IMG/VR virus record: IMGVR_UViG_3300042544_001590
Coordinates: 143,490 to 207,489 of that record
Strand: one strand, 5' to 3'
Length of the DNA stretch: 64,000 bases
This document shows, in pieces, positions 6,432-59,154 of this stretch. Positions within the stretch are counted from its first letter, which is position 1. Every line of letters begins with the position of its first letter. The notes under the pieces are model-generated. The model ran no database searches and was not told the DNA's origin. It was given only the letters and a program-made list of their open reading frames with translations. The translations under genes were made by a program, and so were the position numbers.

Positions 6432-7740
6432 AATTGATTTTGATTATTTTGAGAAAGTTCTGGTGAAGAACGCGATCACAAATGGGTCTTATCTCGCTTC
6501 CATCGCTGATTACGTCCAACCAAAATATTTTACTGATAAAAATATCGCAAAATATTTTGAGATTGTCGCGGATTTCTATGAGAAACGGCAAGCTCTTCCC
6601 ACATTTTCAGAGGTTAAAACGTATCTCACCACTGATGAACTCAAGACCAACTTCAAAAAGCTGATTGAGTCTTTCAAGGAGATTGATTCCAACCACAATG
6701 AGGATGAATTATACGAGAATACGGAAAGATTTCTCAAGGAACGGGGGATGTATCACTCCATTTTGGAGTCAGCGGAAGAAATATCGGAAGGAGAAGCTGA
6801 TACTGCCAAGATCGTGGAGAAATTTGAGAAGATTGCGGGTATTAATCTCAATGTTGACAAGGGAATTGAGCTTTATGGTGATGTTGAGAAGGTTATTGAT
6901 GACATTCTGAGTGATGAAGCTACCATTTCTTCCAAATGGCCATGGTTGGATGAGGCTCTTGGTGGAGGATTTCAAGAAGCTGGTAAGGCTCTGTATGTGT
7001 TTGCTGGACAATCCAACATTGGTAAGAGTATCTTCCTTGGTAACGTTGCTGCAAACATGGCATCCCAAGGTAAGCATGTGCTTGTGGTGACTTTGGAGAT
7101 GAGTGAAACGCTCTATGCCAAGAGAATTGCGTCCAATGTGACGAAGATTCCCATGAAGGAGTTCCGAAATTGTGTTCCCACGCTTAGACATGCTCTGGAA
7201 GAGGAACATAAGAACACTGATGGTAGAATTTACATCAAGGAATTTCCCCCATCAACGATTACTCCCAAGCAATTGGGAGCGTTCATCAAGAAGATGAAGG
7301 ATTCTGGTATTAGGATTGATGCTATTGTTCTTGACTACATCACCTTGATGACTGCTGCTGGTGTAAATTCCTATGAGAAAGGCAAGAACATCTGTGAACA
7401 GATCAGAGCGTTGACGTATGTATTTAAATGCCCTATAATTAGCGCATGTCAGCTAAATCGATCTGCTGTGGGGCAAAATAACCCTGATATGTCGGGTGTT
7501 GCAGAGAGTTTGGCAATTGTCATGACTGCTGACGTTATCACATCCATCTTCCAGAACGAGGAAGATCAGGAAATGGGTATTATCCGTCTGGGAATGATGA
7601 AAAACCGATTTGGTATGCGGGGAATGGTTCAAGCCATGAGGATTGACTACCAAACGCTCACCGTTTATCAATCGGAGGAAGATGAGGAAGAGTTGATGAA
7701 CGATGAAGAACTTAGTCTGCTTGAGAAGCTTTCGGAATAA
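6424..7740 (+). CDS. DnaB-like replicative helicase (T4 gp41)
   Basis: Walker A AGQSNIGKS, TLEMSE, IKEFP, LDYI, CQLNR, AES, KNRFG. Confidence 0.93.
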   Translation: MSEIDFDYFEKVLVKNAITNGSYLASIADYVQPKYFTDKNIAKYFEIVADFYEKRQALPTFSEVKTYLTTDELKTNFKKLIESFKEIDSNHNEDELYENTERFLKERGMYHSILESAEEISEGEADTAKIVEKFEKIAGINLNVDKGIELYGDVEKVIDDILSDEATISSKWPWLDEALGGGFQEAGKALYVFAGQSNIGKSIFLGNVAANMASQGKHVLVVTLEMSETLYAKRIASNVTKIPMKEFRNCVPTLRHALEEEHKNTDGRIYIKEFPPSTITPKQLGAFIKKMKDSGIRIDAIVLDYITLMTAAGVNSYEKGKNICEQIRALTYVFKCPIISACQLNRSAVGQNNPDMSGVAESLAIVMTADVITSIFQNEEDQEMGIIRLGMMKNRFGMRGMVQAMRIDYQTLTVYQSEEDEEELMNDEELSLLEKLSE

Positions 7741-7753
7741 AAAACAATTTTAC

Positions 7754-7759
7754 TAAATA
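7754..7759 (+). promoter_or_regulatory. late promoter
   Basis: TAAATA-N5-ATG 7765. Confidence 0.65.
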
Positions 7760-7764
7760 ATTAA

Positions 7765-8262
7765 ATGAATAATTATTTCAAAGAATTGGGTTTAATTTAT
7801 GAAAATATTTTATTAGAGGCAAATTTATCAAATAAAAATCTTTTTTATGGCTTAAAAAGTATGCTGGATGGTGGAGATGATTTTGTATTGTTGACTGATA
7901 GAAACATCGACACGGACAACCAACAAACTATGAGTTGTCAATTTATTTATAAAGGAACTAGACATATTAAAGTTTTCACAGGAGCATTTTTTGAAAATAA
8001 AAATTATAATAATGTTTCACATATTACTGTTACTATATTTGAAGTAACCCCAGAGGGTAAAACAATATCTAAATTGGATACTAATGTATTCTATAATAAA
8101 GGTGGACACCTTGATCTTTCACACGATCCAGTAATATCTACGGTTGAGAATTTTGTAAAATATGTAAAATCAGTATTGGATAGGTCTGATAGGGATGGTG
8201 ATGATGAAATATTACCACCGAAATCTCCAAGCCCGATGAGTAAAAAATTGTTATCAGTTTGA
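7765..8262 (+). CDS. hypothetical protein, putative internal head protein
   Basis: AT-rich ORF with late promoter; N-terminus LIYENILLE-A. Confidence 0.6.
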   Translation: MNNYFKELGLIYENILLEANLSNKNLFYGLKSMLDGGDDFVLLTDRNIDTDNQQTMSCQFIYKGTRHIKVFTGAFFENKNYNNVSHITVTIFEVTPEGKTISKLDTNVFYNKGGHLDLSHDPVISTVENFVKYVKSVLDRSDRDGDDEILPPKSPSPMSKKLLSV

Positions 8263-8355: not shown

Positions 8356-9210
8356 ATGTCTCGCGTATTTGCTTGGGTCAACTCAGATTTAGATGGAATT
8401 GGATCAACAATTCTATTGGGAAACCTTTTCAAAAATTTTGAGTATCGCCACTGTTTCTTCGGTAAATTTGAGGAGCAATACCTACCATGGGCGAAGGAAA
8501 ACGCGGATGATTATGATAAAATCTTCATCGTTGGCATGGTCTTGGATCAAAATCTAATCAAAAAGATTGATGATCACCGTGTCGTGTTCGTTTCAGACCG
8601 TCCCGATGACTTCAAAACATGGGATTCCACCAAGATTCAGGAAGAATGTTCATCTTGCACCAAGATGTTATATAAAAAATTCAAGGAAAAGGTGGAATTT
8701 ACTAAAGATTTGAAGAAATTTTTCCTTTACGTTGACGATTATAATTCATATGATCTGAAACATGAGGAAACCAAGTATCTTAATGCTCTTTACCGCAAAT
8801 CAGGGGGAAATCGCTTTATTAATTTTGTAAATCGCTTCTGGAACGGGTTTGATGGGTTCACCACTACCGAAGTTAAGCTTGCTGAAGATTTTTTTGAGAG
8901 ATTAGACGATGAATTGGTTGATATTACATTATATTCAGGAGAGTGGGAAGGATATAAGGTCATCTCCACGATTTCCAAGTTCTCCGTGAATGAATTATCC
9001 CATGCCATCATGGAAAATTACCAAGGAGACGCTGTGATTGTAATGAATGCGGATACTCAATTTGTATCTTTTAGGAAATACAAAGGATCAGAGGTTGACA
9101 TTGCGAAAATGGCTGGTAATCTGTGTGACGGTGGTGGCGGCGAATGGGCTGCTGGTGGAAAAATCACCAAGGAATTTTTGAAATTTAGTGAAACATTGAG
9201 AGAAATATAA
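8356..9210 (+). CDS. DHH/DHHA1 family phosphoesterase-like protein with degenerate motifs (alternative start 8311)
   Basis: NSDLDG motif I; C-terminal VSFR...GGGGEWAAGG resembling DHHA1 GGGH..AAG. Confidence 0.7.
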   Translation: MSRVFAWVNSDLDGIGSTILLGNLFKNFEYRHCFFGKFEEQYLPWAKENADDYDKIFIVGMVLDQNLIKKIDDHRVVFVSDRPDDFKTWDSTKIQEECSSCTKMLYKKFKEKVEFTKDLKKFFLYVDDYNSYDLKHEETKYLNALYRKSGGNRFINFVNRFWNGFDGFTTTEVKLAEDFFERLDDELVDITLYSGEWEGYKVISTISKFSVNELSHAIMENYQGDAVIVMNADTQFVSFRKYKGSEVDIAKMAGNLCDGGGGEWAAGGKITKEFLKFSETLREI

Positions 9211-9599
9211 ATTATGGAACAGATACAATACCCAATTAAAGTTTATGGTTATACTATAAAAGGATTTAATATTGATGGATTTAATATATTTGAAAGAATT
9301 TTTGATCATCCATCAGATGGAATCGTAGATGAAATAGATGATGGTAAATTTATTAGAAAAACACCAGAGGATGTTGTAAAATTTAAATCTGATAATATGT
9401 TTAATTATAAAAGTTATTGGGTGAATTTTGACGAATTTAAATTATTTATGTGTGAACAAATTAAAGATTTTAAATTGAAGGCTGATGTAGAGTATAAAAA
9501 TAAAATTGAAAATATGAATGAATGTATGGTGGAATTGGAAAAAATAACACCAAGGAATTTTTGAAATTTAGCGAAACACTGAACGAAATTTAAATTATG
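9165..9599 (+). repeat. imperfect 52-bp direct repeat (9165-9216 and 9548-9599) flanking an inserted gene
   Basis: 47/52 identical by manual alignment. Confidence 0.9.
9214..9564 (+). CDS. hypothetical protein (inserted, AT-rich)
   Basis: 116 aa ORF between the direct repeats. Confidence 0.6.
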   Translation: MEQIQYPIKVYGYTIKGFNIDGFNIFERIFDHPSDGIVDEIDDGKFIRKTPEDVVKFKSDNMFNYKSYWVNFDEFKLFMCEQIKDFKLKADVEYKNKIENMNECMVELEKITPRNF

Positions 9600-9884
9600 A
9601 GTAATCCTTCTCCATCTTCTGCAATTATAGAAAGCGAAAGCGATCACCTATTCCTTTGCTATTGTTCCTTCGTGAACCATCTCAAGGGCAAGAAATTGTC
9701 CATCCAGAACGTTTTCGTGACCACTCTCCAAGAGGAGAAGCTGAAAACGATCCTGAAAACGATATTGTCTCTTGACTCTGATCAGGAACTTGTTAAGGTT
9801 TTCCTAGACCAAGACAACGCTCTTGCAAAGTCGAAATACGTTACGAAATTTATCAGGGGGGAACAGAAGAAGAAAAAGAAATGA
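9597..9884 (+). CDS. hypothetical protein
   Basis: 95 aa ORF with core-gene codon usage. Confidence 0.6.
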   Translation: MSNPSPSSAIIESESDHLFLCYCSFVNHLKGKKLSIQNVFVTTLQEEKLKTILKTILSLDSDQELVKVFLDQDNALAKSKYVTKFIRGEQKKKKK

Positions 9885-14190: not shown

Positions 14191-14790
14191 ATGCGTCCGT
14201 TTTACGATTTTTATCTAGAGAAATTTTCTGATTTGGGTAAATTATCCCCCGAACAATTGAGAAAAGGTCAGAGACTTGATCCAAACAACCCCGATAACTT
14301 CCAACAGGTGAGCGGGAGGGTGTTTTCTCAAGCCCTTACCAACATCACAAAGAATGATGAATTTCGCCGAACGGTAAATCCAAAGTTTTTCAAGAATATC
14401 AAGAACAATCTCAGTGTTTATAAAGTTGAAGAATATCAGCGCATGAAATGTTTCCTTGGAAAGAACAATTCCAGTGGTTTTGCCATCAAGGATGGGGATG
14501 AATTGGTGTCAGTATTCTCTTCTCAAGAATCTTCTGGTAATGCGCTGGTTCAGGAAGCGATTCGGCAAGGTGCCACACGATTGGATTGTTTTGCCACACA
14601 AGATGAAAACGGTAATATCAAGGATGAGGGTTTATACAGGCTTTATAGTAGGAATGGGTTTGTGATTGACAAAACGCTGAACATGGACGGAGAATATCCT
14701 GTCAAGAATGGGATATCCTACTTCGTGGACGAAAATGGAAATGTTGATCCCACCAATCCTACCGTGGTGATCTTCATGGTTAAAAACTAG
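14191..14790 (+). CDS. GNAT-like domain protein, putative internal head protein
   Basis: ELVSVFS...GNALVQEAIRQGATRLDCF...LYSRNGF; TAAATA (14180)-N5-ATG. Confidence 0.55.
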   Translation: MRPFYDFYLEKFSDLGKLSPEQLRKGQRLDPNNPDNFQQVSGRVFSQALTNITKNDEFRRTVNPKFFKNIKNNLSVYKVEEYQRMKCFLGKNNSSGFAIKDGDELVSVFSSQESSGNALVQEAIRQGATRLDCFATQDENGNIKDEGLYRLYSRNGFVIDKTLNMDGEYPVKNGISYFVDENGNVDPTNPTVVIFMVKN

Positions 14791-15102: not shown

Positions 15103-15910
15103 TTTAAACATACGGGAGCTTTACCAAAAGATAATTGAGGAGAGGGCGGCAGCTAGAGGCGTGATCTTGATGGAAAATGTGAAGATTCCTTCCAATAATT
15201 CCAGTCCCGATCAGGTCAATTTTGATGGAAAGTCATATTCTTATGAATTGGGGGACGCTTTTTCCCTCATAGGAGACACACTTTACCATACGGAGAACAC
15301 CCACCCATACATTTTCAATTCACTTTTAAAAATTAAAAACGATCCAAAGGATTTTAAGAGGATATTAAAATCGTATTATGTGGAAATATGTGGAAAATTC
15401 AACAAATCCGATTTGGAATACTTTTTCAATAACCAGAAAGCGGAAAGCATGGGAGATACCAGAATCAACACTCAATCTGGAAGAATCTGGAAAGATATCA
15501 CCTCAACATCCGCTAAAAAGGATGTGTCGGTGGTGGTGTTTTGGTGTAGGGAGAAAGATATCCAACCGGACACGCTTAAAAAAATCAAGAAGTGTTTTAC
15601 TAAAAATGATATTTTTTGGGCTGCAACCGATTCCAAGAATTTCAACCATTTTGGGGATTCTTATCAAGACACTCCATCTGGAGAAATCAAGGAATTGAAA
15701 AGTAAAATATATCCAGAGCTTTCTCACGAAGATATTGTGGATATCCTGATGAGAGCGCATTCAAATTTCAAGATATCTCCCTTTGAGAAGAAGGTGGTGT
15801 GGGAATTCCGAGGAATCAACCCAGAAGATTTGAAAGTTATTGATGGAGGATACCCATCGGTGGCGGAATTCAGGGATAAACAAAAATTTAGCGAAAATTA
15901 TGAAAAATAA
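15092..15910 (+). CDS. hypothetical protein, putative internal head protein
   Basis: Likely ATG 15092; N-terminus IRELYQKIIEE. Confidence 0.6.
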   Translation: MKDDLNIRELYQKIIEERAAARGVILMENVKIPSNNSSPDQVNFDGKSYSYELGDAFSLIGDTLYHTENTHPYIFNSLLKIKNDPKDFKRILKSYYVEICGKFNKSDLEYFFNNQKAESMGDTRINTQSGRIWKDITSTSAKKDVSVVVFWCREKDIQPDTLKKIKKCFTKNDIFWAATDSKNFNHFGDSYQDTPSGEIKELKSKIYPELSHEDIVDILMRAHSNFKISPFEKKVVWEFRGINPEDLKVIDGGYPSVAEFRDKQKFSENYEK

Positions 15911-16559
15911 ATTTGATGAATTGTATGAACAGGTGATTATTGAAAGTGGTCTTTCAAGAGTATGGAGAAAGATTCAAAATCATTCTTCTGGCACCATCAC
16001 GGCTTTTAGGGGTGATGTCCCATATCAGCAGAATATTAGAAATAATAAAAAGATACTTGCTTATCTACAATCTAAAGGATATTCGGTGACATCTATTATG
16101 GGGACATACATTGAAAATTTTAGAGATGAAGAAAAAAAGGAGGAGATTCACGCTAGAAATGCTGGAGGTGATCCATATGATCCCGAAGAAAGACATGTTC
16201 AAGAAAGATCATTTTTAGTAGTAAATGATAGGGTGGAAGGTGATGATGGTGGTAAATTGGCGCACGATCTTTTTAAATTGGGGGTAGCTTTTGATCAGGA
16301 TTCGGTTATGATTATTCCCGTTGGTGGTAATAACGCATATCTGTGGGGAACATCCAAAAGAGAAGAATCGTATCCCGGTTACAATATCAAAGCTCCAGTT
16401 GGTAGTGGTAAATATGGAAAAACATCAGGAGCATTTTTATCTAAGATTAAGGGGCGAGAATTCGCGTTTGAGGCTATCAAATCACCACAAACCATAAATG
16501 GCAAGCGTGGTCAAATGATTTCGTTGAAAGAAGTTAAGAAACAACTCAATGAAATATAA
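15900..16559 (+). CDS. hypothetical protein, putative internal head protein
   Basis: Likely ATG 15900; MKNKFDELYEQVIIE-SGLSR, ITAFR, FDQDSV. Confidence 0.6.
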   Translation: MKNKFDELYEQVIIESGLSRVWRKIQNHSSGTITAFRGDVPYQQNIRNNKKILAYLQSKGYSVTSIMGTYIENFRDEEKKEEIHARNAGGDPYDPEERHVQERSFLVVNDRVEGDDGGKLAHDLFKLGVAFDQDSVMIIPVGGNNAYLWGTSKREESYPGYNIKAPVGSGKYGKTSGAFLSKIKGREFAFEAIKSPQTINGKRGQMISLKEVKKQLNEI

Positions 16560-16950
16560 TATTTTTCTGGACGACATTCGGTTTCCCAAGGATGCTTTTC
16601 TCCAAAAAGAATTGGCATATCTCACGGAATATTCTAAAATTCCTGAAAACGAATGGGTGATCGTGAGGAATTATGAGGATTTTGTGAAAACGATTGAAGA
16701 ACGCGGTATTCCAGCGGCAGCGAGTTTTGATTGTGATTTAAATTCTGAACATTTTAGACATTATGTTAAGGATAGTATTAATTCCGGTATTTATGAATGG
16801 GAAAATTTCAAATCTAAATGTGGAATTCATTGTGCTTTATATTTGAAATCTTTATTGTGTGATGGAGATGACACAAAAGTTTTTATACATAGTGCTAATA
16901 TTATTGGTAGTATGATTATTAGAGAAATGATGAGGGCATATTTATTTTAA
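16549..16950 (+). CDS. receiver-like (cyclic-phosphate processing REC type) domain protein
   Basis: IFLDD.R.P, W.IVRNY, SFD.DL, G..CA, HSAN..G. Confidence 0.65.
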   Translation: MKYNIFLDDIRFPKDAFLQKELAYLTEYSKIPENEWVIVRNYEDFVKTIEERGIPAAASFDCDLNSEHFRHYVKDSINSGIYEWENFKSKCGIHCALYLKSLLCDGDDTKVFIHSANIIGSMIIREMMRAYLF

Positions 16951-17909
16951 ATATTTTTATTTTTTGGGATTAAAATCCATCCTTTATGTATTCCTGTTTT
17001 TGATGGTTTGTTTTCTTTTCCAGCTTTTGCTAAAAAATTAAAATCCAAATTTTTTTCTCTACAAAATTCCGCGACATTATGTATTAAATATTCCTCTCCA
17101 GTGTAAATATTTTTAATAATTCTTTTAGTTTCTTGAAAAGAATCAATATTTTTTATAAATTTTTCATATTTTCTATCTAATCTAATAGATTTTGTAGAAT
17201 CTTTATAAATCCATTCCAAAAATTTGAATGCATCTTTTTGAATTGATATACTACAAAGGTTTACATATTTAGTATAATATATTTCTTGAGTTGTTATCTC
17301 TATGGTTTTTAGATAATCTTTAATAAAAATTAGACATTCTGAAGTGCTTAGAAGATTTATTCTGTATCTGTTATTGATAATAGTAACATTACCATCTCCA
17401 TCAAATATACCCCTAACGAAGTGTGAATAATATTTTTCTTCGATAATTGGAAATTTAAAAGATTTTGATTTATTTTCATCAACACCGTGATTTTTTATAT
17501 ATTGGCAAAATTCTTTAGAATTGACTTGTAAAAATTCTATATCATAGGTTTTTCCTGTACGTTTGTCATATCTATTGATACTTGAAATTGGACTTCCAGA
17601 ATCTATAGCCTTTTTAAATTTTGGTAAAACATCTTTATCCTTTACACCAATAGTTAATTTATAGCCAGATTTTTGAATACATCCATCTGCAACAATAAAA
17701 CCCAACCAGTAAGCTTTTTCGGCAGAATCAATTTTTTCGAAATATTTTATATCTAATGATCTTTTTCTCATAGGTGTTGGAATTCCATTAGAATCTAATA
17801 TTTTTTTGATATGTCTAACTGTTATGTTTAAATTCTTAGAAACCTTACTCAAACTTTGGAGCTTGAGGTATTCATCTATAACTGTTTGATGTTTTATAAA
17901 TTCTTTCAT
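16947..17909 (-). mobile_element. free-standing LAGLIDADG homing endonuclease
   Basis: Two motifs AYWLGFIVADG and HFVRGIFDGDG; AT-rich; opposite strand to neighbours. Confidence 0.85.
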
Positions 17910-17957
17910 AATTATTCGGGTGTATGTTTATACTTAGTCTCCTAATCTAAAAAAACG

Positions 17958-17996
17958 CGTATTATCCGTGATATTATGAAAGAATATCTTGCTTGA
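17958..17996 (+). pseudogene. orphaned 3' end of the REC-like gene
   Basis: Reads RIIRDIMKEYLA*, matching MIIREMMRAYLF* at the end of 16549-16950. Confidence 0.65.
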
Positions 17997-18024
17997 CATC
18001 CAAAATTCTTCATTAAGTATTAAC

Positions 18025-18375
18025 ATGAAGAACAACGTAAGCACACAGGGGTATTTCATCAAGAGACTTAGAGATTCTGGATTCGCTACCATCAAGCTGT
18101 TTGACAATTATGCACAACACGATCCTCGCAAGTGGTCGATCATGGTCGATCCCAATAATACTTCCGTGATCATCACTTGTTACCAGAACAAGGAAGCTGT
18201 GGGTGATGTGATGTTTGAGTTCAATGATGGGGGTAATCGCTTCATTAAGAACTTTAATCTCAAGACGCAGAGCATGGAAATCGTTGTCACCACCCTGATT
18301 GAAAAAGGGGTGGAGCAAATGAATATCAACTCTGAGTATGTAAAGTCTAAGTATGAATATGGCCAAGAAGGATGA
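18025..18375 (+). CDS. hypothetical protein
   Basis: TAAGTA-N5-ATG 18025. Confidence 0.6.
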   Translation: MKNNVSTQGYFIKRLRDSGFATIKLFDNYAQHDPRKWSIMVDPNNTSVIITCYQNKEAVGDVMFEFNDGGNRFIKNFNLKTQSMEIVVTTLIEKGVEQMNINSEYVKSKYEYGQEG

Positions 18376-37138: not shown

Positions 37139-38419
37139 ATGGAATTTGATAAGCTGTATCGTGAATTGATGTTGGAGTTCTCGGAAGGAGCGATCCGTAA
37201 CATTGTGAAGAAATTCCAAAACGATGCCACGGAACAAGAAATCCGTAGAGAGGTTCAGGATTTTGAAAAGTATAAGAACGCTTTACAAAAGAAAGACCCT
37301 TTCCAATATAAATCGTGGATAGAGTTCACGGAAGCGATCCATGCTGCAAAGGGTAAGGCTGAATTTAAAAGGAAAAAAGCACCAACCCAAGATGTTGTTG
37401 CCAATCAGGATGATATCATAGCCGATGATGAGAACGTGACCATCTATCGGGGAGATTCCCAAGACAAGTGCGTGTTATATGGAAAGGGTTATTCTTTCTG
37501 TATCTCAAGACAGGTTGGAGGTAATATGTTCTCTAACTATCGTTTGGGTAAAGAATCTACATTCTATTTCATATATTTCAAGAAGAAACCGAAGAGTGCG
37601 GTTGACCATATTATGGTGTTGGATCATACCAAGCATGGGTATGAATGGACTTTTGCCGATAATGATACTAAAAAGGTGAATGGTGGGTGGGATGAGGTGG
37701 TGGGTAAATATCCAGAATTAAAGAAATATGAAAAATTATTAGTTAATAAAAAGTTGGATGATGAAGAGAGTGAATTTATAAAAGTGTTAAAGAATTTTTC
37801 TAAAAATCCAAGATTAGAAAATTTTAATAAATTCTCTTATGAACAAAAAGCACAAGCTCTTAAAAGTGTTGTTGATTTAAGTGATCAAATATGGAACGCT
37901 TTAGATTCTACTTTGAGAAATGAATTTTTGAGCATAGGTCCAAATTTAACAAAACATCAAGCATTTAATCTTAAACCTAATGAAATTGAACGGTATAAAA
38001 AAACAAGAAATCTTTCCAGACAACATTTAATTGATGATTATAAATATAAGGAAAATATATTTGATTTTTCAGATGATGAAAGATTGGCATTGGAGTATAT
38101 GGAAAAAGTTGGAAGTTCAAAATTTTTCAAAGATGATAGATTATCTAATAAAAAATTAAAGTTTGAAACATCTAATGATTATGAAAGGTCTATTTATGAC
38201 TTGGTTTTTGATGAAAACGGTGCATTAGTGACATATCAAAATATTGTAAGAGATGTTTTTGGGGGGAATCCAGATGATGTTTTATACATAAAGTATGATA
38301 CGAATGGAAATATTATTAATATTGAATCAAGCTATGATGATATTGAAGATACTTCAAATTATAATGAATCTATCCATTTTGATAAATATTATCAAAAGAT
38401 AATGTCAAGTCTCTTTTAA
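37139..38419 (+). CDS. hypothetical protein, putative internal head protein
   Basis: MEFDKLYRELMLE; lies antisense between gp25 and gp6. Confidence 0.6.
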   Translation: MEFDKLYRELMLEFSEGAIRNIVKKFQNDATEQEIRREVQDFEKYKNALQKKDPFQYKSWIEFTEAIHAAKGKAEFKRKKAPTQDVVANQDDIIADDENVTIYRGDSQDKCVLYGKGYSFCISRQVGGNMFSNYRLGKESTFYFIYFKKKPKSAVDHIMVLDHTKHGYEWTFADNDTKKVNGGWDEVVGKYPELKKYEKLLVNKKLDDEESEFIKVLKNFSKNPRLENFNKFSYEQKAQALKSVVDLSDQIWNALDSTLRNEFLSIGPNLTKHQAFNLKPNEIERYKKTRNLSRQHLIDDYKYKENIFDFSDDERLALEYMEKVGSSKFFKDDRLSNKKLKFETSNDYERSIYDLVFDENGALVTYQNIVRDVFGGNPDDVLYIKYDTNGNIINIESSYDDIEDTSNYNESIHFDKYYQKIMSSLF

Positions 38420-38901
38420 ATAATTGAATAACCCGTGGAATTCAGCTTCGATTTCAGGGAAAGCCCCTTGACACCCAGAGATGGAACATCAATTTGCAGA
38501 GACACATCATATTCCTGCGCGTCCTCATTACCCACAACACTCACGTTTCTCACGACAATGCGTGGTTCCGAACGGGGTAATTTCCGTTCAATGTCATCCT
38601 GAATGTCTTCCGCTGTGAATTCATCCACTGGTTCAAACAGATAGCGTCTCAGATCAATGCCAAAGGTTGGATTGAGTATCTTTTGACCGGGAGATGTAAG
38701 GAAAGCATTGGAAATGCTTGTCTTGATGGCTTCCACATCGAAAATAGCCTGAATATCCTTCAGTTGCTCTTTGCGATTGAGTTGGTTGTTGAAAGAATAC
38801 GAAGGTTCCAGATCAAACGACACATCCTTGTAGAGATAATCGTTTTTCAGGGATACTTCATCAATCTTGGATGCTTGAAGTGATTTGATTTTGATGTTCA
38901 T
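38416..38901 (-). CDS. baseplate wedge subunit (T4 gp25-like)
   Basis: D..AIK.SI.N...T.PG.K..NP.FG..L..YLFEP, EPRI. Confidence 0.9.
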   Translation of the reverse strand: MNIKIKSLQASKIDEVSLKNDYLYKDVSFDLEPSYSFNNQLNRKEQLKDIQAIFDVEAIKTSISNAFLTSPGQKILNPTFGIDLRRYLFEPVDEFTAEDIQDDIERKLPRSEPRIVVRNVSVVGNEDAQEYDVSLQIDVPSLGVKGLSLKSKLNSTGYSII

Positions 38902-54854: not shown

Positions 54855-57257
54855 ATGGCAACACGCACAATAAATTCGGCTGGGGTAGAGATATTTGAGA
54901 GAGATTTAAGTCTAGTCGCACAGACGAACGTAGGCACGAATGTCTTTGTAGCTGGATATACCCCCCAAGGTTATTCCGACGAGGTTTTGAAAATCACCAC
55001 CAGAGATGAACTGGAATCAATCTACGGAACCCCAACCAATAGCGCAGAACGCTATTTCTATTACACTGTCCGCGAACTACTCAACTCTCCTGCAAACATC
55101 TACACTTTCCGCCTTCCATATGGATCGGGAACTGGAGATGGATTTGGAACACAACATTCCGCTCTTGTATATCCTGTTGTTGCCGCTACTCCAACTGATG
55201 TAACAACAACCAGAAGCCTTGATCTTTCTGCTGCAACCTATTTCCTTGGAAAACCCTATCAGATTACCCTATCTGAAACGGAATTTGCCCAAGCCATGGA
55301 AGGAACCCTCTTCGATTGGTCTTCCACTGCTGGAAGTAGAGCGGAACTTATTTCTGGATTTTCCACTGACCCTCTTAGTGCGCTAACCTTAAAACAACGT
55401 ATGGGCAATGCTGGTGTCATTGTCTTTGATAAAGCCCAAACCACGATCAATAGCCAATTTGAAGGTTATTATGTCGGTATCGCAGATAACGTCAATCTCA
55501 ATCCTGCATCCAATTTTGATGCAATCACCCGCGCCTATACCACAAGCCTTACTGCTGGGGTGATTTCGGATTATACCCAGATTCCAAACGGAACTCTCCA
55601 ATTCAATCTCTCAGCTACTGCTGGAGGTGCCACTGGTAGTATCTCCCAAGTCATGGAGAACCTTACCGATTATAACATCGATGGTAGGGAAGATGATGAC
55701 CTTCTGAATGTTGGTGTGTTTAAGCTCCGCAAGAGTGTTTATGCAACCGAAGCGTTTAAACTGGATTATGTGCTTGATGACCGTATCGTGGGTTCCATTG
55801 ATACCTTCAGAACTCAACTCAATCCAAATGGTGGACCATCGGTTCCATTCTTCCTTGAGACTCAGGATACCAATTCCCGCAACGTGGAAATCATGGTCAA
55901 CCCATTCATCTCCAACAAATTCACACAATCCTCGCTGGATTCTTCGGGTAATCCTCTCAAGAAAATCCGTGTGGTGACTGAGAGCTTGCTTAATACTGAA
56001 TATGCATCCATTTCTGCTGCATTAGGTATTACAACCACTACCTCTACCGCGCCCGCTCTTAGTGCTAACTTAACGGTAGCCAATACATATGCTCTTTCTG
56101 GTCTTGATGCAAGCGTGGGAGTCGCAAATGCCCTGTATCCTCTTGGTGTTTACAACCCTGTCAAGATTACCCAAAAGATCATCGGCAATGTTCCAACCAA
56201 GATCAACCGCGCTCTGGAATCCATCAAGAATGATGAAATCTATGACATTGATGTGGTTGTCGAAGGTGGTCTGGGAACGATCTTTACGATGATGTCTGCT
56301 GCGGGAACTGATTACTATGATGACACCCTCTACAATACCGCTCTGAAGACCAAGGTGGATACCCTGAGAACTTCGGGTGACATTTCCAATGATGCGGTTG
56401 CAACCGATCTCCGTGCCAATTACAGCGCGATCTTCAACCAATTTGAGAATTTCTGTAACCTTCCAAGCAATACTGGTGGTCGTGGAGACTGTGTGTTCAT
56501 TGCTGATCCAATCCGCCACATCCTTGTTACGGGTAGAAACACCAAGATTCTCTCCGATAGAAACAAAAATTTCCAAAAGGATGTTTATTGGGCAATGCGT
56601 CACCAATTTGAATTGGAAAACACTTCCTATGCTGCCACCTATGGTAACTGGATTCTGGGTTATGATGATTTCAGCGGTGAAAAGGTTTGGCTTCCATTCT
56701 CTGGATACCAAGCTGCTATCATGGCCCGTAGCGATGCTGCGGAATTCCCATGGTCTGCTCCTGCCGGATTTACCCGTGGTCTGGTGACTAATGCTCTGGA
56801 TATTGCAATCAATCCGAATCAGAAACAGCGTGATGAGTTCTACAAGATCAACATCAACCCTGTCATGTTCTCTCCCGCCCAAGGTGTGGTTGTGTTTGGT
56901 CAGAAAACTATGAGCCGCAAACCAAGTGCATTTGATCGTATCAATGTCCGTAGGCTCTTCCTCGCTCTGGAAAGACCTACCAAGAAAGCTGCTCAATTCT
57001 TCGTGTTTGAACCCAACAACGAATTCACCCGCACTCGCTTGGTGAACGTTCTCACTCCGATCTTCGAATTTGCGAAACAGAACGGCGGTTGCTACGATTA
57101 TCTGATCGTTTGTGACGAACGGAATAATACTCCCCAAGTCATTGATACCAATGAGTTGAAAGTTGACATTCTTATCAAACCAACGAGAACCGCCGAGTTT
57201 ATTTTAATAACTTTTACGGCTACCCGTAGTGATGCCAACTTTGAAGAGTTGATTTAA
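54855..57257 (+). CDS. contractile tail sheath protein (gp18-like)
   Basis: S.GVEI.E.DLS, PW.APAG..RG, INP, FGQKT, SAFDRINVRRLFL, FEPN. Confidence 0.95.
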   Translation: MATRTINSAGVEIFERDLSLVAQTNVGTNVFVAGYTPQGYSDEVLKITTRDELESIYGTPTNSAERYFYYTVRELLNSPANIYTFRLPYGSGTGDGFGTQHSALVYPVVAATPTDVTTTRSLDLSAATYFLGKPYQITLSETEFAQAMEGTLFDWSSTAGSRAELISGFSTDPLSALTLKQRMGNAGVIVFDKAQTTINSQFEGYYVGIADNVNLNPASNFDAITRAYTTSLTAGVISDYTQIPNGTLQFNLSATAGGATGSISQVMENLTDYNIDGREDDDLLNVGVFKLRKSVYATEAFKLDYVLDDRIVGSIDTFRTQLNPNGGPSVPFFLETQDTNSRNVEIMVNPFISNKFTQSSLDSSGNPLKKIRVVTESLLNTEYASISAALGITTTTSTAPALSANLTVANTYALSGLDASVGVANALYPLGVYNPVKITQKIIGNVPTKINRALESIKNDEIYDIDVVVEGGLGTIFTMMSAAGTDYYDDTLYNTALKTKVDTLRTSGDISNDAVATDLRANYSAIFNQFENFCNLPSNTGGRGDCVFIADPIRHILVTGRNTKILSDRNKNFQKDVYWAMRHQFELENTSYAATYGNWILGYDDFSGEKVWLPFSGYQAAIMARSDAAEFPWSAPAGFTRGLVTNALDIAINPNQKQRDEFYKININPVMFSPAQGVVVFGQKTMSRKPSAFDRINVRRLFLALERPTKKAAQFFVFEPNNEFTRTRLVNVLTPIFEFAKQNGGCYDYLIVCDERNNTPQVIDTNELKVDILIKPTRTAEFILITFTATRSDANFEELI

Positions 57258-57263
57258 TCCTAT

Positions 57264-57299
57264 AAAAAACCATATCTAATTATAGATATGGTTTTTTTT
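57264..57299. terminator. bidirectional intrinsic terminator
   Basis: AAAAAACCATATCTA...TAGATATGGTTTTTT. Confidence 0.85.
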
Positions 57300-57327
57300 G
57301 TATCTATTTGCTAAATACTAATGAAGT

Positions 57328-59154
57328 ATGAATGGGCTTATTGAAGATAACAACACTAAAGAGTATATTTTAAATCGTAAAAATAATGGAATGCCCTTAT
57401 CGAAATCTTTATTTAAAAGAAAATTTCAAAGTATCTTAAATGAAATAAATGATCATAATAACAAATACCTCTTAAAAAATGATAAATTTTCACAAGAAGT
57501 GTATAATTGGATATTTGATATTAAAGAAAATCCAAAATGTCCGCTAACTGGATTGGATTTAAAATTTGATTATCATAAATTTAAATACAGACCAGTTAGA
57601 GGGAAAGGCAAACATTTACCAGACGTTCAACAAATTATAACAAGCAAAAGATTGAAAAATTTTAGTTATAAGAAGTTGTATGAGTCTAAAAGAAATGTTG
57701 AGCCAGTTGAAATATCATTTGAAAAAATAAGAAAATTATTAAATAAAAATTTCAAAAATATTACTAATTTTGGGGGGTTTACCACCAAATTCTTATCAAG
57801 ATTTCCAGAATATTATAATTATGTGGATTCGGATCAATTTTTACCATGGTGTGAATCCTTTCAGGAAAAAATATATTGTATTATCAACAATATTCCAGAA
57901 TCAATAGGTAAAAAATACATGGGATTTGGAAAGGGATATTCCAAATATGCTGATTGGGTGGAGTATCGTAGAAGTAAAGCTGCCAAAAAAATGAATGCTG
58001 CCGTAGATTACGACAAAGATAAGACCATATTAGAACTTAATAAAAGAATCGAAGAGTTAAAATTAGCCAATAAAGCAACCAATAATTTACGACAATCTTT
58101 TATGGGAACCGATCCAAATTTAGTTAGAAGTATTTTTACCCATACCTCAGAGTATCCAGATATAAAATTCAGCAATAGGGTATTTTTATTACTCAATGGG
58201 CAACCAGTTCCAGATAAAGGTTATATAAAACCAGTATTTTTCAGTTTGGATAAAGGATATAGTATGAGATTTTCATCTCAAAATGGAACTTCCAAACCGG
58301 AACAAGAATTATTTGATTGGTTGGGGGGATACATACCAAATCTAAAAAAAGATAGAACGGTGTTAAATGGTAGAGAAATAGATGTATTTTCTGAAGAGAA
58401 TGGTGTAGGAATTGAATATGATGGTGTATATTGGCATAATTATGAAATAGTGGGTGATAAATCATTATTTTTGAAAAATCAATTGGCGAAATCAAAAAAC
58501 ATAAGATTATTACACATTTTTGAAACTGAATGGCTACAAAAACAGGATATTGTTAAGAGTATTATTCTTTCTAAATTTAATATTTTTGAAAATAAATATC
58601 ATGCTAGAAAATGTGATATTAGAACGGTTGATAGTAAAATTTGTGTTGATTTTTTAAACGAAAATCATTTACAAGGTAAAGATAATTCAAAATATAAATA
58701 TGGACTCTATCATAAGGATGAGTTGGTTTCGGTGATGACGTTTGGGCAACGAACCATTACGAAAAATCCACAAATGGAATTGATTAGATTTTGCAATAAA
58801 AAAAATACTACAGTTATTGGAGGTGCTGGTAAATTATTCAAACATTTCATTAAAACGCATAATCCAACATATGTTAAGACATACGCAAACGCCAGAATAA
58901 GTGATGGTGATATGTATAAAAAATTAGGATTCTCTTTCAAACACCACTCACCCCCAAATTATTGGTATTATAAACCAGAAGCAGCCAAAAAGATCAAATT
59001 GATGCATCGAAGTGGTTTTCAAAAACATAGGCTGTCTGGGATTCTTGAAAGATTTGACAAGGGTAAAACGGAATGGGAAAACATGAGCGATCATGGATAT
59101 AAGAAAATCTACGACTGTGGCAACCTTGTTTTTGAATATCAAAGAGAAAATTGA
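57328..59154 (+). mobile_element. Hef-like putative homing endonuclease with C-terminal GNAT/Mom-like domain
   Basis: S..E, EID, IEYDG.YWH, HIFE.EW nuclease motifs; then NHLQG, ELIRF, GGA.KL, Y..LGF, IYDCG; AT-rich; between sheath and tube. Confidence 0.7.

What the first reader, a model, noticed from the sequence alone, without database searches (positions are those of the whole stretch)
16549..17996. LAGLIDADG endonuclease invaded a REC-like gene and left the old 3' end behind
Seen: the REC-like gene ends IIREMMRAYLF*. On the far side of the antisense endonuclease gene, the intergenic DNA reads IIRDIMKEYLA* (17961-17996), same length and register. The 3' half of the current gene is more AT-rich than its 5' half. 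Known: free-standing homing endonucleases spread with a cleavage-resistant allele of a neighbouring gene. Inference: the target lies in this accessory REC-like gene, an unusual target, and the element carried a replacement tail.
Basis: partly seen in the sequence, partly recalled or inferred. Interest (0 to 1): 0.6.

Follow-up and report, generated by a model that had tools for sequence, protein, structure and literature searches.

The report
Endonuclease cassette left orphan gene tail
A selfish DNA-cutting enzyme gene entered this phage genome carrying a substitute end for the neighbouring gene and stranded the last 13 codons of the old gene beside it; it is a clean natural record of how such elements move, of a kind known from fungal mitochondria and T4 phages.

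Summary
The cREC_REC gene (16549-16950) ends IIREMMRAYLF*. Beyond an antisense LAGLIDADG endonuclease gene (16947-17909), 17961-17996 reads IIRDIMKEYLA*. Endonuclease-free relatives end in exactly that peptide (L030-L034: 11/11 residues, 36/39 nt) and run on into the same 28-nt spacer and downstream gene.

Positions 16732-17955 form one foreign block of 25% GC in a 38% GC genome. It holds the last 73 cREC codons, the endonuclease gene and its 46-nt leader. The left join is a homologous crossover at 16710-16731. The right join, at about 17950-17957, is illegitimate.

In nine other phage lineages this endonuclease subfamily sits head-to-head with a NIF/HAD phosphatase gene. Two of those lineages keep orphan NIF heads cut exactly after the DxD codons. 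All eight endonuclease-linked NIF alleles depart from the D[IL]DET motif of endonuclease-free ones. The family probably homes into NIF, and the window copy, which has no NIF neighbour, looks ectopic.

It is a new variant of a known kind, of moderate interest.

The parts
16549..16731 (+). Native 5' part of the cREC_REC gene (codons 1-61)
   Evidence: 88-90% nt and 90-95% aa identical to endonuclease-free kin L003, L176 and L178; GC 38.3%
16710..16731 (.). Left (homologous) crossover interval, in the codons for the conserved SFDxDL block
   Evidence: Best breakpoint is 16730 against L014 (Fisher p 2e-11) and 16709 against L176 (p 7e-14). L015 shows the same breakpoint position against L020
16732..16950 (+). 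Foreign 3' part of cREC (codons 62-133 plus stop), the replacement tail; in frame and full length, with all family-invariant residues kept
   Evidence: About 58% nt and 50-55% aa identity to kin; GC 25.6%, GC3 15.3. 92.7% nt identical to L005, where it again abuts the endonuclease gene. dN/dS 0.16
16947..17909 (-). Free-standing LAGLIDADG homing endonuclease gene, 320 aa, convergent with cREC; the stop codons overlap
   Evidence: PF14528 in two stretches. Both motif aspartates are invariant in 15 homologs. dN/dS 0.11 against L005. Absent from L003, L030 and L178 at the same locus. No Rfam intron
17910..17955 (-). Endonuclease leader, part of the cassette. It ends at the position where relatives have the NIF start codon, and contains TATAAACA (17932-17925 on the - strand)
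   Evidence: Homologous to the leaders of L004 and L006, with the shared end AATCTA(A/C)AAAAA followed there by the ATG of NIF; GC 26.1%
17950..17957 (.). Right (illegitimate) junction between the cassette's A-run and the resident cREC codons
   Evidence: Homology to endonuclease-free cREC tails begins at about 17956. Only A/G-rich microhomology is present
17956..17996 (+). Orphan native cREC 3' end (13 codons plus stop); no start codon, frame closed upstream
   Evidence: IIRDIMKEYLA* is the C-terminus of L030-L034 (11/11 aa, 36/39 nt); 8/11 to L003 and 10/11 to P0020
17997..18024 (+). Native 28-nt spacer, as in endonuclease-free, NIF-less relatives
   Evidence: Same length and about 85% identity in L003, L030 and L178
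18025..18375 (+). Downstream gene (116 aa), marking the native right flank
   Evidence: 85-87% nt identical to L003, L030, L176 and L178
17900..17912 (.). Arm 1 of a perfect 13-nt inverted repeat; covers the endonuclease start codon
17973..17985 (.). Arm 2 of the inverted repeat, inside the orphan tail
   Evidence: predicted RNA stem with z -4.75

Best explanation
Positions 16732-17955 are one imported cassette: the last 73 codons of a diverged cREC allele, a convergent free-standing LAGLIDADG homing endonuclease gene, and its 46-nt leader.

Shown: on the left the cassette is joined to the resident cREC gene by a homologous crossover in the SFDxDL codons. On the right it is joined without homology to the last 13 codons of a resident-type, endonuclease-free cREC allele. 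Those codons continue into the native spacer and the downstream gene. The hybrid cREC gene is full length and conserved. The old tail is a non-coding orphan.

Inferred: the endonuclease belongs to a subfamily whose normal place is head-to-head with a NIF/HAD phosphatase gene. Its normal insertion point is right after the DxD codons of the catalytic DxDxT motif, and the element restores NIF with its own replacement head. The donor was therefore of the type cREC'-endonuclease-NIF'. This phage line has no NIF at this locus, so homology existed on the cREC side only. The other end was sealed by illegitimate, microhomology-type double-strand-break repair, as shown experimentally for one-sided intron homing in T4.

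Not resolved: whether this happened in one step (a break in the NIF-less recipient) or in two (normal homing next to NIF, then replacement of NIF' from a NIF-less relative).
For: Endonuclease-free kin.
- L003 has cREC, a 28-nt spacer, then the same downstream gene, with no endonuclease.
- L030-L034 tails equal the orphan at 11/11 aa and 36/39 nt.

Mosaic structure.
- Nucleotide identity to L003 is about 90% up to 16731, about 58% from there to 16950, and 80-93% again from 17962.
- Breakpoint p is 2e-11 to 7e-14.
- The N-half is 90-95% aa identical to kin and the C-half 50-55%.
- GC is 38.3 in the native part, 25.6/24.9/26.1 across the cassette, and 34-42 beyond it.
- The leader is homologous to the L004 and L006 leaders and ends where their NIF ATG stands.
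- A second lineage shows the same mosaic: L015 against L020 has the cREC 3' half at about 65%, NIF at about 72% and the flanks at about 88%.
- Cassette integrity: endonuclease dN/dS is 0.11 and new-tail dN/dS 0.16, with equal dS of 0.27-0.29 against L005.

NIF link.
- NIF/HAD is the divergent neighbour in L004, L006, L007/8, L009-12/L175, L095, L183, L184, L185 and the P0057 place. All of these neighbours are mutually homologous.
- Orphan NIF heads end at DxD and abut the endonuclease stop in L009 and L184.
- D[IL]DET is found in 9 endonuclease-free lineages and in 0 of 8 linked ones.
- The window genome's own NIF lies 90 kb away and reads DIDEC, a non-consensus type.

One-sided illegitimate repair is documented in T4 (Parker et al. 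1999, as reviewed in PMC2988022).
Against: - No donor with a near-identical cREC'-endonuclease-NIF' arrangement was found. The closest complete relative of the endonuclease is 59% identical.
- The only close copy, L005, is a 947-bp contig that stops before the leader, so the orphan is seen in one lineage only (plus the identical L002).
- No cleavage data exist.
- The cassette ending exactly at the NIF ATG position is unexplained by a random illegitimate join.
- The two lineages closest to the window copy (window and L004) both have cREC' fused stop-to-stop with the endonuclease gene. That would also fit a cREC-directed enzyme.
- The D[IL]DET contrast has two exceptions among endonuclease-free genes (L180 and the window genome's own NIF), and the lineages are not fully independent.
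Confidence: 0.75

Rival explanations
1. The endonuclease recognises the cREC gene itself. It cut the endonuclease-free allele just upstream of the orphan, and repair copied the endonuclease gene together with a cleavage-resistant cREC 3' half. The broken right end began at codon -13.
For: In a one-sided repair, the position of the orphan places the break at or left of codon -13. The stretch just upstream (codons KVYVHSANEEGRR, equivalent to window 16868-16910) is the best-conserved 3' stretch among endonuclease-free alleles. It is changed at 8-12 of 22 positions in the window allele and at 5-9 of 22 in L015, including a TCT-to-AGT serine switch. cREC' is fused stop-to-stop with the endonuclease gene in both the window and L004. 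The window genome's own NIF, 90 kb away, has not been invaded.
Against: Across the subfamily cREC is only one of several convergent neighbours; the others are Metallophos, HD and unknown genes. NIF/HAD is always the divergent neighbour. The two orphan NIF heads put the insertion point in NIF.
Confidence: 0.2
2. The endonuclease gene is a passenger. Ordinary recombination between co-infecting mosaic phages, with one illegitimate junction, produced the arrangement without any endonuclease-made break.
For: These phages are mosaics throughout. The upstream gene switches partner at about 16165. L178 carries a window-like patch without any endonuclease gene. No single relative is closest on both flanks. 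If the enzyme targets NIF, it had nothing to cut at this NIF-less locus.
Against: The same divergent tract surrounds the endonuclease gene in two lineages, with the same cREC breakpoint. The gene is under purifying selection. It shows presence/absence polymorphism at fixed loci.
Confidence: 0.2
3. Duplication of the cREC tail in place when the endonuclease gene inserted, followed by divergence of the upstream copy.
For: The two tails have the same length and register.
Against: The divergent tract starts 220 nt upstream of the stop, far beyond the 41-nt duplicated part. It has the GC content of the endonuclease gene, not of the genome. It is under purifying selection. The orphan, not the coding copy, matches relatives.
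Confidence: 0.02

Closest known systems
Mobile endonuclease ORFs (mORFs) that create hybrid genes in fungal mitochondria: Allomyces macrogynus atp6; Glomus atp6, atp9, cox2, nad3 (PMC3630166)
   Same: An endonuclease ORF (LAGLIDADG in most of the Glomus cases) arrives with a foreign C-terminal coding piece that completes the host gene. The native C-terminus stays downstream as an unused copy, and that copy is the one resembling close relatives.
   Different: This case is in a phage, not an organelle. The endonuclease gene is on the opposite strand with its own leader, not in phase with the host gene. The orphan is only 13 codons. The host gene is an accessory cREC gene. In relatives the same endonuclease subfamily does the mirror operation on the 5' head of NIF.
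Free-standing homing endonucleases of T4-type phages (seg, mob; 'intronless homing') (PMC2988022)
   Same: The host is a T4-like phage (gp32 nearby in relatives; primase 29% identical to a cyanomyovirus). The endonuclease gene is not in an intron or intein. It shows presence/absence polymorphism, co-conversion of flanking DNA, and a possible hairpin over the start codon with a late-promoter-like motif in the loop.
   Different: The enzyme is LAGLIDADG rather than GIY-YIG or HNH. The element sits inside, or abutting, the gene it affects and supplies a replacement gene end. Orphan gene ends are left behind.
[quoted passage not shown]
   Same: There is homology on one side only, and the other junction forms at microhomology after resection. 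This allows invasion of ectopic sites.
   Different: That was an engineered cross. Here it is inferred from a natural genome.
Nuclease genes at boundaries of genetic exchange in ICP1 and other phages (PMC10448857)
   Same: An endonuclease gene lies at the edge of a recombinant tract between related phages.
   Different: No orphan gene ends or replacement ends are described there.

Membership tests
LAGLIDADG homing endonuclease | Two LAGLIDADG motifs in one chain (monomeric type) | tested here: met
   PF14528 matched in two stretches, E 8.7e-10. The motifs lie around residues 66-76 and 163-173 and are conserved in 15 homologs.
LAGLIDADG homing endonuclease | Catalytic acidic residue at the end of each motif | tested here: met
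   D75, D170 and D172 are invariant in alignment A4.
LAGLIDADG homing endonuclease | Site-specific cleavage of the element-free allele | not testable with these tools
   Needs an enzyme assay.
LAGLIDADG homing endonuclease | Similarity to solved members | tested here: inconclusive
   Only 2dch (a putative homing endonuclease), at E 0.0039 with the profile.
Free-standing homing endonuclease (intronless homing) | Not inside an intron or intein | tested here: met
   It is on the opposite strand to its neighbours. The cREC ORF is complete. No Rfam match in 16300-18200 at E<=1.
Free-standing homing endonuclease (intronless homing) | Presence/absence at a fixed locus among related genomes, with a co-converted flank | tested here: met
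   Window against L003/L030/L178, and L015 against L020.
Free-standing homing endonuclease (intronless homing) | Over-transmission in mixed infection | not testable with these tools
   Needs phage crosses; no cultured host is known.
mORF-type hybrid gene (foreign C-terminus plus native C* orphan) | Foreign 3' piece in frame that restores a full-length gene | tested here: met
   133 aa, as in kin, with all family-invariant residues kept.
mORF-type hybrid gene (foreign C-terminus plus native C* orphan) | The native 3' end is retained downstream and is closer to relatives than the coding copy is | tested here: met
   The orphan is 36/39 nt identical to L030, while the coding tail is about 58% identical to kin.
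mORF-type hybrid gene (foreign C-terminus plus native C* orphan) | Endonuclease ORF co-oriented, or in phase, with the host gene | tested here: not met
   The endonuclease gene is antisense and convergent.
cREC_REC (PF20274) | Profile match above the curated cut-off | tested here: met
   51.8 bits against a cut-off of 27. The domain was defined in PMC7824862 as a predicted cyclic-phosphate-processing Rec domain linked to HAD phosphatases.

The most novel reading that the evidence does not exclude
This is one stranded copy of an undescribed family of phage LAGLIDADG endonucleases. The family homes into the catalytic DxDxT codons of NIF/HAD phosphatase genes without any intron or intein. It keeps the host gene alive by bringing, on the opposite strand, its own leader and a replacement gene head, and it leaves the old head (or, in this window, an old cREC tail) as an orphan. 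In this window the orphan has since been recruited as one arm of a hairpin that hides the endonuclease start codon, in the manner of T4 I-TevI, segB and mobE.
Probability: 0.35. Interest if true: 0.65.

Novelty: new variant of a known kind. Interest (0 to 1): 0.5.

Why it matters
The locus preserves both junctions of a homing-endonuclease acquisition in a natural phage: one homologous and one illegitimate. This gives a natural counterpart to the one-sided repair seen in engineered T4 crosses, and it shows how such elements can reach sites that lack their normal target.

The comparison with relatives suggests a way for an endonuclease gene to sit inside an essential motif of a protein gene without an intron or intein, by carrying a substitute gene end. 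Until now this has been documented for 3' ends in fungal mitochondria.

The genes affected, cREC and a NIF/HAD phosphatase, form a predicted RNA-end or nucleotide-signal processing pair in large phages (PMC7824862). The element therefore shuffles alleles of a probable counter-defence module.

For annotation, it explains a short conserved 'intergenic' stretch and warns that the cREC gene is a chimera.

Tried and rejected
1. Orphan extending back to about 17925. A first alignment hinted at remains of the KVYVHSAN codons with a 1-nt deletion. Rejected: 17910-17955 matches the endonuclease leaders of L004 and L006 better, including a shared 12-nt end.

2. A decayed orphan NIF head under the endonuclease 3' end (a T-run followed by GGGAT, 16959-16971, resembling the IFWD codons). 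Rejected: those bases are the reverse of the I/V-P codons conserved in the endonuclease family.

3. Group I intron or other RNA family: none found.

4. A conserved start-codon hairpin in relatives: none in L004, L006, L007 or L009, with z between -0.9 and +1.5.

5. A clear mosaic around the L009 insertion: not seen, because no close endonuclease-free relative was available.

6. Other low-GC islands of the window as further endonuclease genes: no Pfam endonuclease hits.

7. Near-identical DNA in GenBank phages: none. The metagenome scan with the endonuclease gave only an L009-type locus.

8. Whether the HEG-linked cREC 3' halves of the window and L015 form a group of their own: no. They are 56% identical to each other, no closer than either is to other alleles.

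The large representative protein search, structure prediction and complex prediction were not used. No alternative genetic code was used.

Full report
SETTING. The window is the last 64 kb of a 207,489-bp IMG/VR phage record with direct terminal repeats. The phage is a distant T4-type virus. Its primase-like protein is 29% identical to that of cyanomyoviruses, and relatives carry gp32 a few genes away. No GenBank phage is close at the DNA level.

THE OBSERVATION. It holds.
- ORF 16549-16950 (+) is a 133-aa cREC_REC protein (PF20274, E 1.4e-13) ending IIREMMRAYLF*.
- ORF 16947-17909 (-) is a 320-aa two-motif LAGLIDADG protein. The two stop codons overlap.
- 17961-17996 reads IIRDIMKEYLA*.
- Only these two peptides in the six-frame translation of the window precede a stop with at least 6/11 identity. 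Twenty shuffles gave none.
- The 3' part of cREC is AT-rich as claimed: 25.6% GC (GC3 15.3) against 38.3% (GC3 37.7) for the 5' part.

Endonuclease-free relatives exist.
- L003 has the same upstream gene end, a 133-aa cREC gene, a 28-nt spacer and the same downstream gene, with no endonuclease.
- L028-L034 and L178 have the same layout.
- Their cREC proteins end ...EEGRRIIL/RDIMKD/EF/YLA. L030-L034 end in exactly the orphan's 11 residues, with 36 of 39 nt identical. P0020 matches 10/11.
- The orphan is therefore the genuine 3' end of an endonuclease-free allele. It begins at about 17956 and is 13 codons plus the stop.

THE CASSETTE.
- Divergence. Against L003, nucleotide identity is about 90% from 16165 to 16731, about 58% from 16732 to the stop, absent across the endonuclease gene, and 80-93% again from 17962 onward. 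The best breakpoint is 16709-16730 (Fisher p 2e-11 and 7e-14). In protein terms the N-half is 90-95% identical to kin (P0005, P0003, L003) and the C-half only 50-55%.
- Composition. The cREC 3' part (25.6% GC), the endonuclease gene (24.9%) and the 46-nt leader (26.1%) form one block in a 38% GC genome.
- Leader. It is homologous to the leaders of the related endonuclease genes in L004 and L006. It ends in the same AATCTA(A/C)AAAAA that in those loci is followed at once by the ATG of a NIF phosphatase gene. The cassette is thus 16732-17955. Its right junction, at about 17950-17957, has only A/G-rich microhomology.
- State of the genes. The hybrid cREC gene keeps every family-invariant residue. 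In L005, a 947-bp contig, the endonuclease (92% aa identical) again abuts the same unusual tail. dN/dS is 0.11 for the endonuclease gene and 0.16 for the tail, with equal dS. The two have been kept together and functional.

A SECOND LINEAGE. L004/L015 carries an endonuclease 59% identical to the window's. It is again convergent and stop-overlapping with cREC, and is followed by a leader, NIF and the same downstream gene. Against its endonuclease-free kin L020, identity is about 86% up to cREC codon 58 and about 65% in the cREC 3' half. NIF is about 72% identical, and identity returns to about 90% after NIF. In endonuclease-free genomes cREC and NIF overlap (ATGCTAA or ATGA).

WHERE THE FAMILY REALLY LIVES.
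- Every other member of the subfamily whose context could be read sits head-to-head with a NIF/HAD-type phosphatase gene: L004, L006, L007/L008, L009-L012/L175, L095 (endonuclease frameshifted), L183, L184, L185 and the P0057 place (NT5C). These neighbours are mutually homologous (Pfam NIF for most).
- The convergent neighbour varies: cREC, Metallophos, an HD protein, or unknown genes.
- In L009-L012 and L175, the 31 nt between the cREC stop and the endonuclease stop are the first ten codons of a NIF gene (MINRIFWDID, 27/30 nt identical to L042). The functional NIF on the far side starts MINRIYFDADETL.
- In L184 an orphan MISTHKNKLFFDLD likewise abuts the endonuclease stop.
- Both orphans end exactly after the second Asp codon of the DxDxT motif.
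- Endonuclease-free NIF genes read D[IL]DET in nine lineages. The exceptions are L180 (DNDQC) and the window genome's own NIF (DIDEC). All eight endonuclease-linked NIF genes read otherwise: DCDET, DYDEC, DLDST, DADET, DIDNC, DLDNS, DIDHT and DIDEA.
- Counting lineages, with the linked alleles at 0 of 8 consensus and the free alleles at 9 of 11, a Fisher test by hand gives about 6e-4. The lineages are not fully independent.
- The simplest reading is that the family homes into the DxD|xT codons of NIF and carries a replacement head. This is inference; no cleavage was tested.

THE WINDOW COPY IN THAT LIGHT.
- This genome has no NIF beside cREC. Its only NIF lies 90 kb away (G000:C1:70133-70648), has no endonuclease gene next to it, and has a non-consensus motif.
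- That NIF is 85% aa identical to the endonuclease-linked NIF of L185. L185 shares a 98% identical segment with that locus, so the other NIF locus is also polymorphic for an endonuclease in this phage group.
- The orphan, spacer and downstream gene match the NIF-less layout (L003, L030, L178), not the cREC-NIF layout of L176.
- The cassette was therefore joined to a NIF-less backbone with homology on the cREC side only, and the other end was sealed illegitimately. One-sided, microhomology-mediated repair of this sort is documented for T4 intron homing (PMC2988022).
- Two routes fit. In one step, there was a break in a NIF-less recipient. In two steps, ordinary homing beside NIF in an L176-like ancestor was followed by replacement of NIF' from a NIF-less relative. 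The second route would explain why the cassette stops at the NIF ATG.
- Flank identities do not decide between the routes.

A target in cREC cannot be excluded.
- The orphan's position would place the break at or upstream of codon -13.
- The codons just upstream (KVYVHSANEEGRR) are conserved among endonuclease-free alleles and heavily changed in both endonuclease-linked alleles.
- The family-wide data nevertheless point to NIF. I give the cREC target about 0.2.

AN EXTRA FEATURE.
- A perfect 13-nt inverted repeat pairs the endonuclease start codon region (17900-17912) with the orphan (17973-17985).
- Only one other such repeat exists in the 64 kb, and shuffles give 0.17 per window.
- The endonuclease-strand RNA folds at -22.8 kcal/mol (z -4.75) with the AUG in the stem. 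TATAAACA, close to the T4 late-promoter consensus, lies in the loop.
- This resembles the hairpin-plus-late-promoter control of I-TevI, segB and mobE (PMC2988022). Relatives have no such hairpin, so it may be a lineage-specific co-option or chance.

COMPARISON WITH THE KNOWN. The closest known phenomenon is the mORF hybrid gene of fungal mitochondria, with a foreign C-terminus and a native C* orphan (PMC3630166). The closest mechanism is intronless homing with one-sided illegitimate repair in T4 (PMC2988022). The differences are:
- a phage host;
- a LAGLIDADG gene on the opposite strand with its own leader;
- an accessory cREC/NIF module, which PMC7824862 predicts to process cyclic and linear phosphate ends;
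- in relatives, the mirror-image replacement of a gene head.

I rate it a new variant of a known kind, with interest 0.5.

LIMITS. No donor was found. The orphan is seen in one lineage only. There are no enzyme data.

Noticed in passing
window 17900-17912 and 17973-17985: A perfect 13-nt inverted repeat joins the endonuclease start codon to the orphan cREC tail. The predicted RNA stem has z -4.75, and a late-promoter-like TATAAACA (17932-17925, - strand) lies in the loop. Relatives have no equivalent.
   Followed up: partly
L009:3982-4011 (- strand), also L010-L012 and L175; L184:2978-3019 (- strand): Orphan 5' heads of NIF/HAD phosphatase genes (MINRIFWDID; MISTHKNKLFFDLD). Each ends exactly after the DxD codons and abuts the stop of a related endonuclease gene. 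This is the mirror image of the window's orphan tail.
   Followed up: yes
NIF heads in L004, L006, L007, L009, L095, L183, L184, L185 against L017-L047 and L176: Endonuclease-linked NIF alleles all depart from the D[IL]DET motif found in endonuclease-free alleles. This may be an immunity signature at the catalytic motif.
   Followed up: partly
G000:C1:70133-70648 (locus L173:1492-2016, - strand): The window genome's only NIF gene lies 90 kb from cREC and reads DIDEC. It is 85% aa identical to the endonuclease-linked NIF of L185. L185 shares a 98% identical 323-nt segment with this locus but has an endonuclease gene upstream of NIF.
   Followed up: partly
window 15840-16559, with window 14191-14790 and L003:3535-4011: The upstream gene (S-AdoMet lyase family) is itself a mosaic. 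Its last 390 nt or so are 90% identical to L003, and the 5' part is unrelated. The N-terminus of the L003 gene instead resembles the N-terminus of window ORF 14191-14790.
   Followed up: no
L178:268-669 (protein P0002): An endonuclease-free cREC allele has a window-like patch (equivalent to window 16729-16848, 67-90% identity per 30-nt bin against 47-80% for L003) and an L003-type tail. It may be the footprint of partial co-conversion or of endonuclease loss.
   Followed up: partly
L095:2447-3476: A frameshifted (broken) copy of the endonuclease gene lies between a NIF-like gene (WWDIDEAL head) and an HD-domain gene.
   Followed up: partly
L012:539-1411: A GIY-YIG/NUMOD1 endonuclease gene lies beside the PTH2 gene. 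It is absent from the otherwise collinear L009-L011, so this is a second endonuclease polymorphism in the same neighbourhood.
   Followed up: no
window 7641-8180, 9101-9720, 37621-38500, 57101-58960: Further low-GC islands (23-26% GC in 400-nt windows). Their ORFs have no Pfam match, and no endonuclease domains were found.
   Followed up: partly
window 57264-57298: The only other perfect inverted repeat of 13 nt or more with a short loop in the window. It is probably a hairpin or terminator.
   Followed up: no
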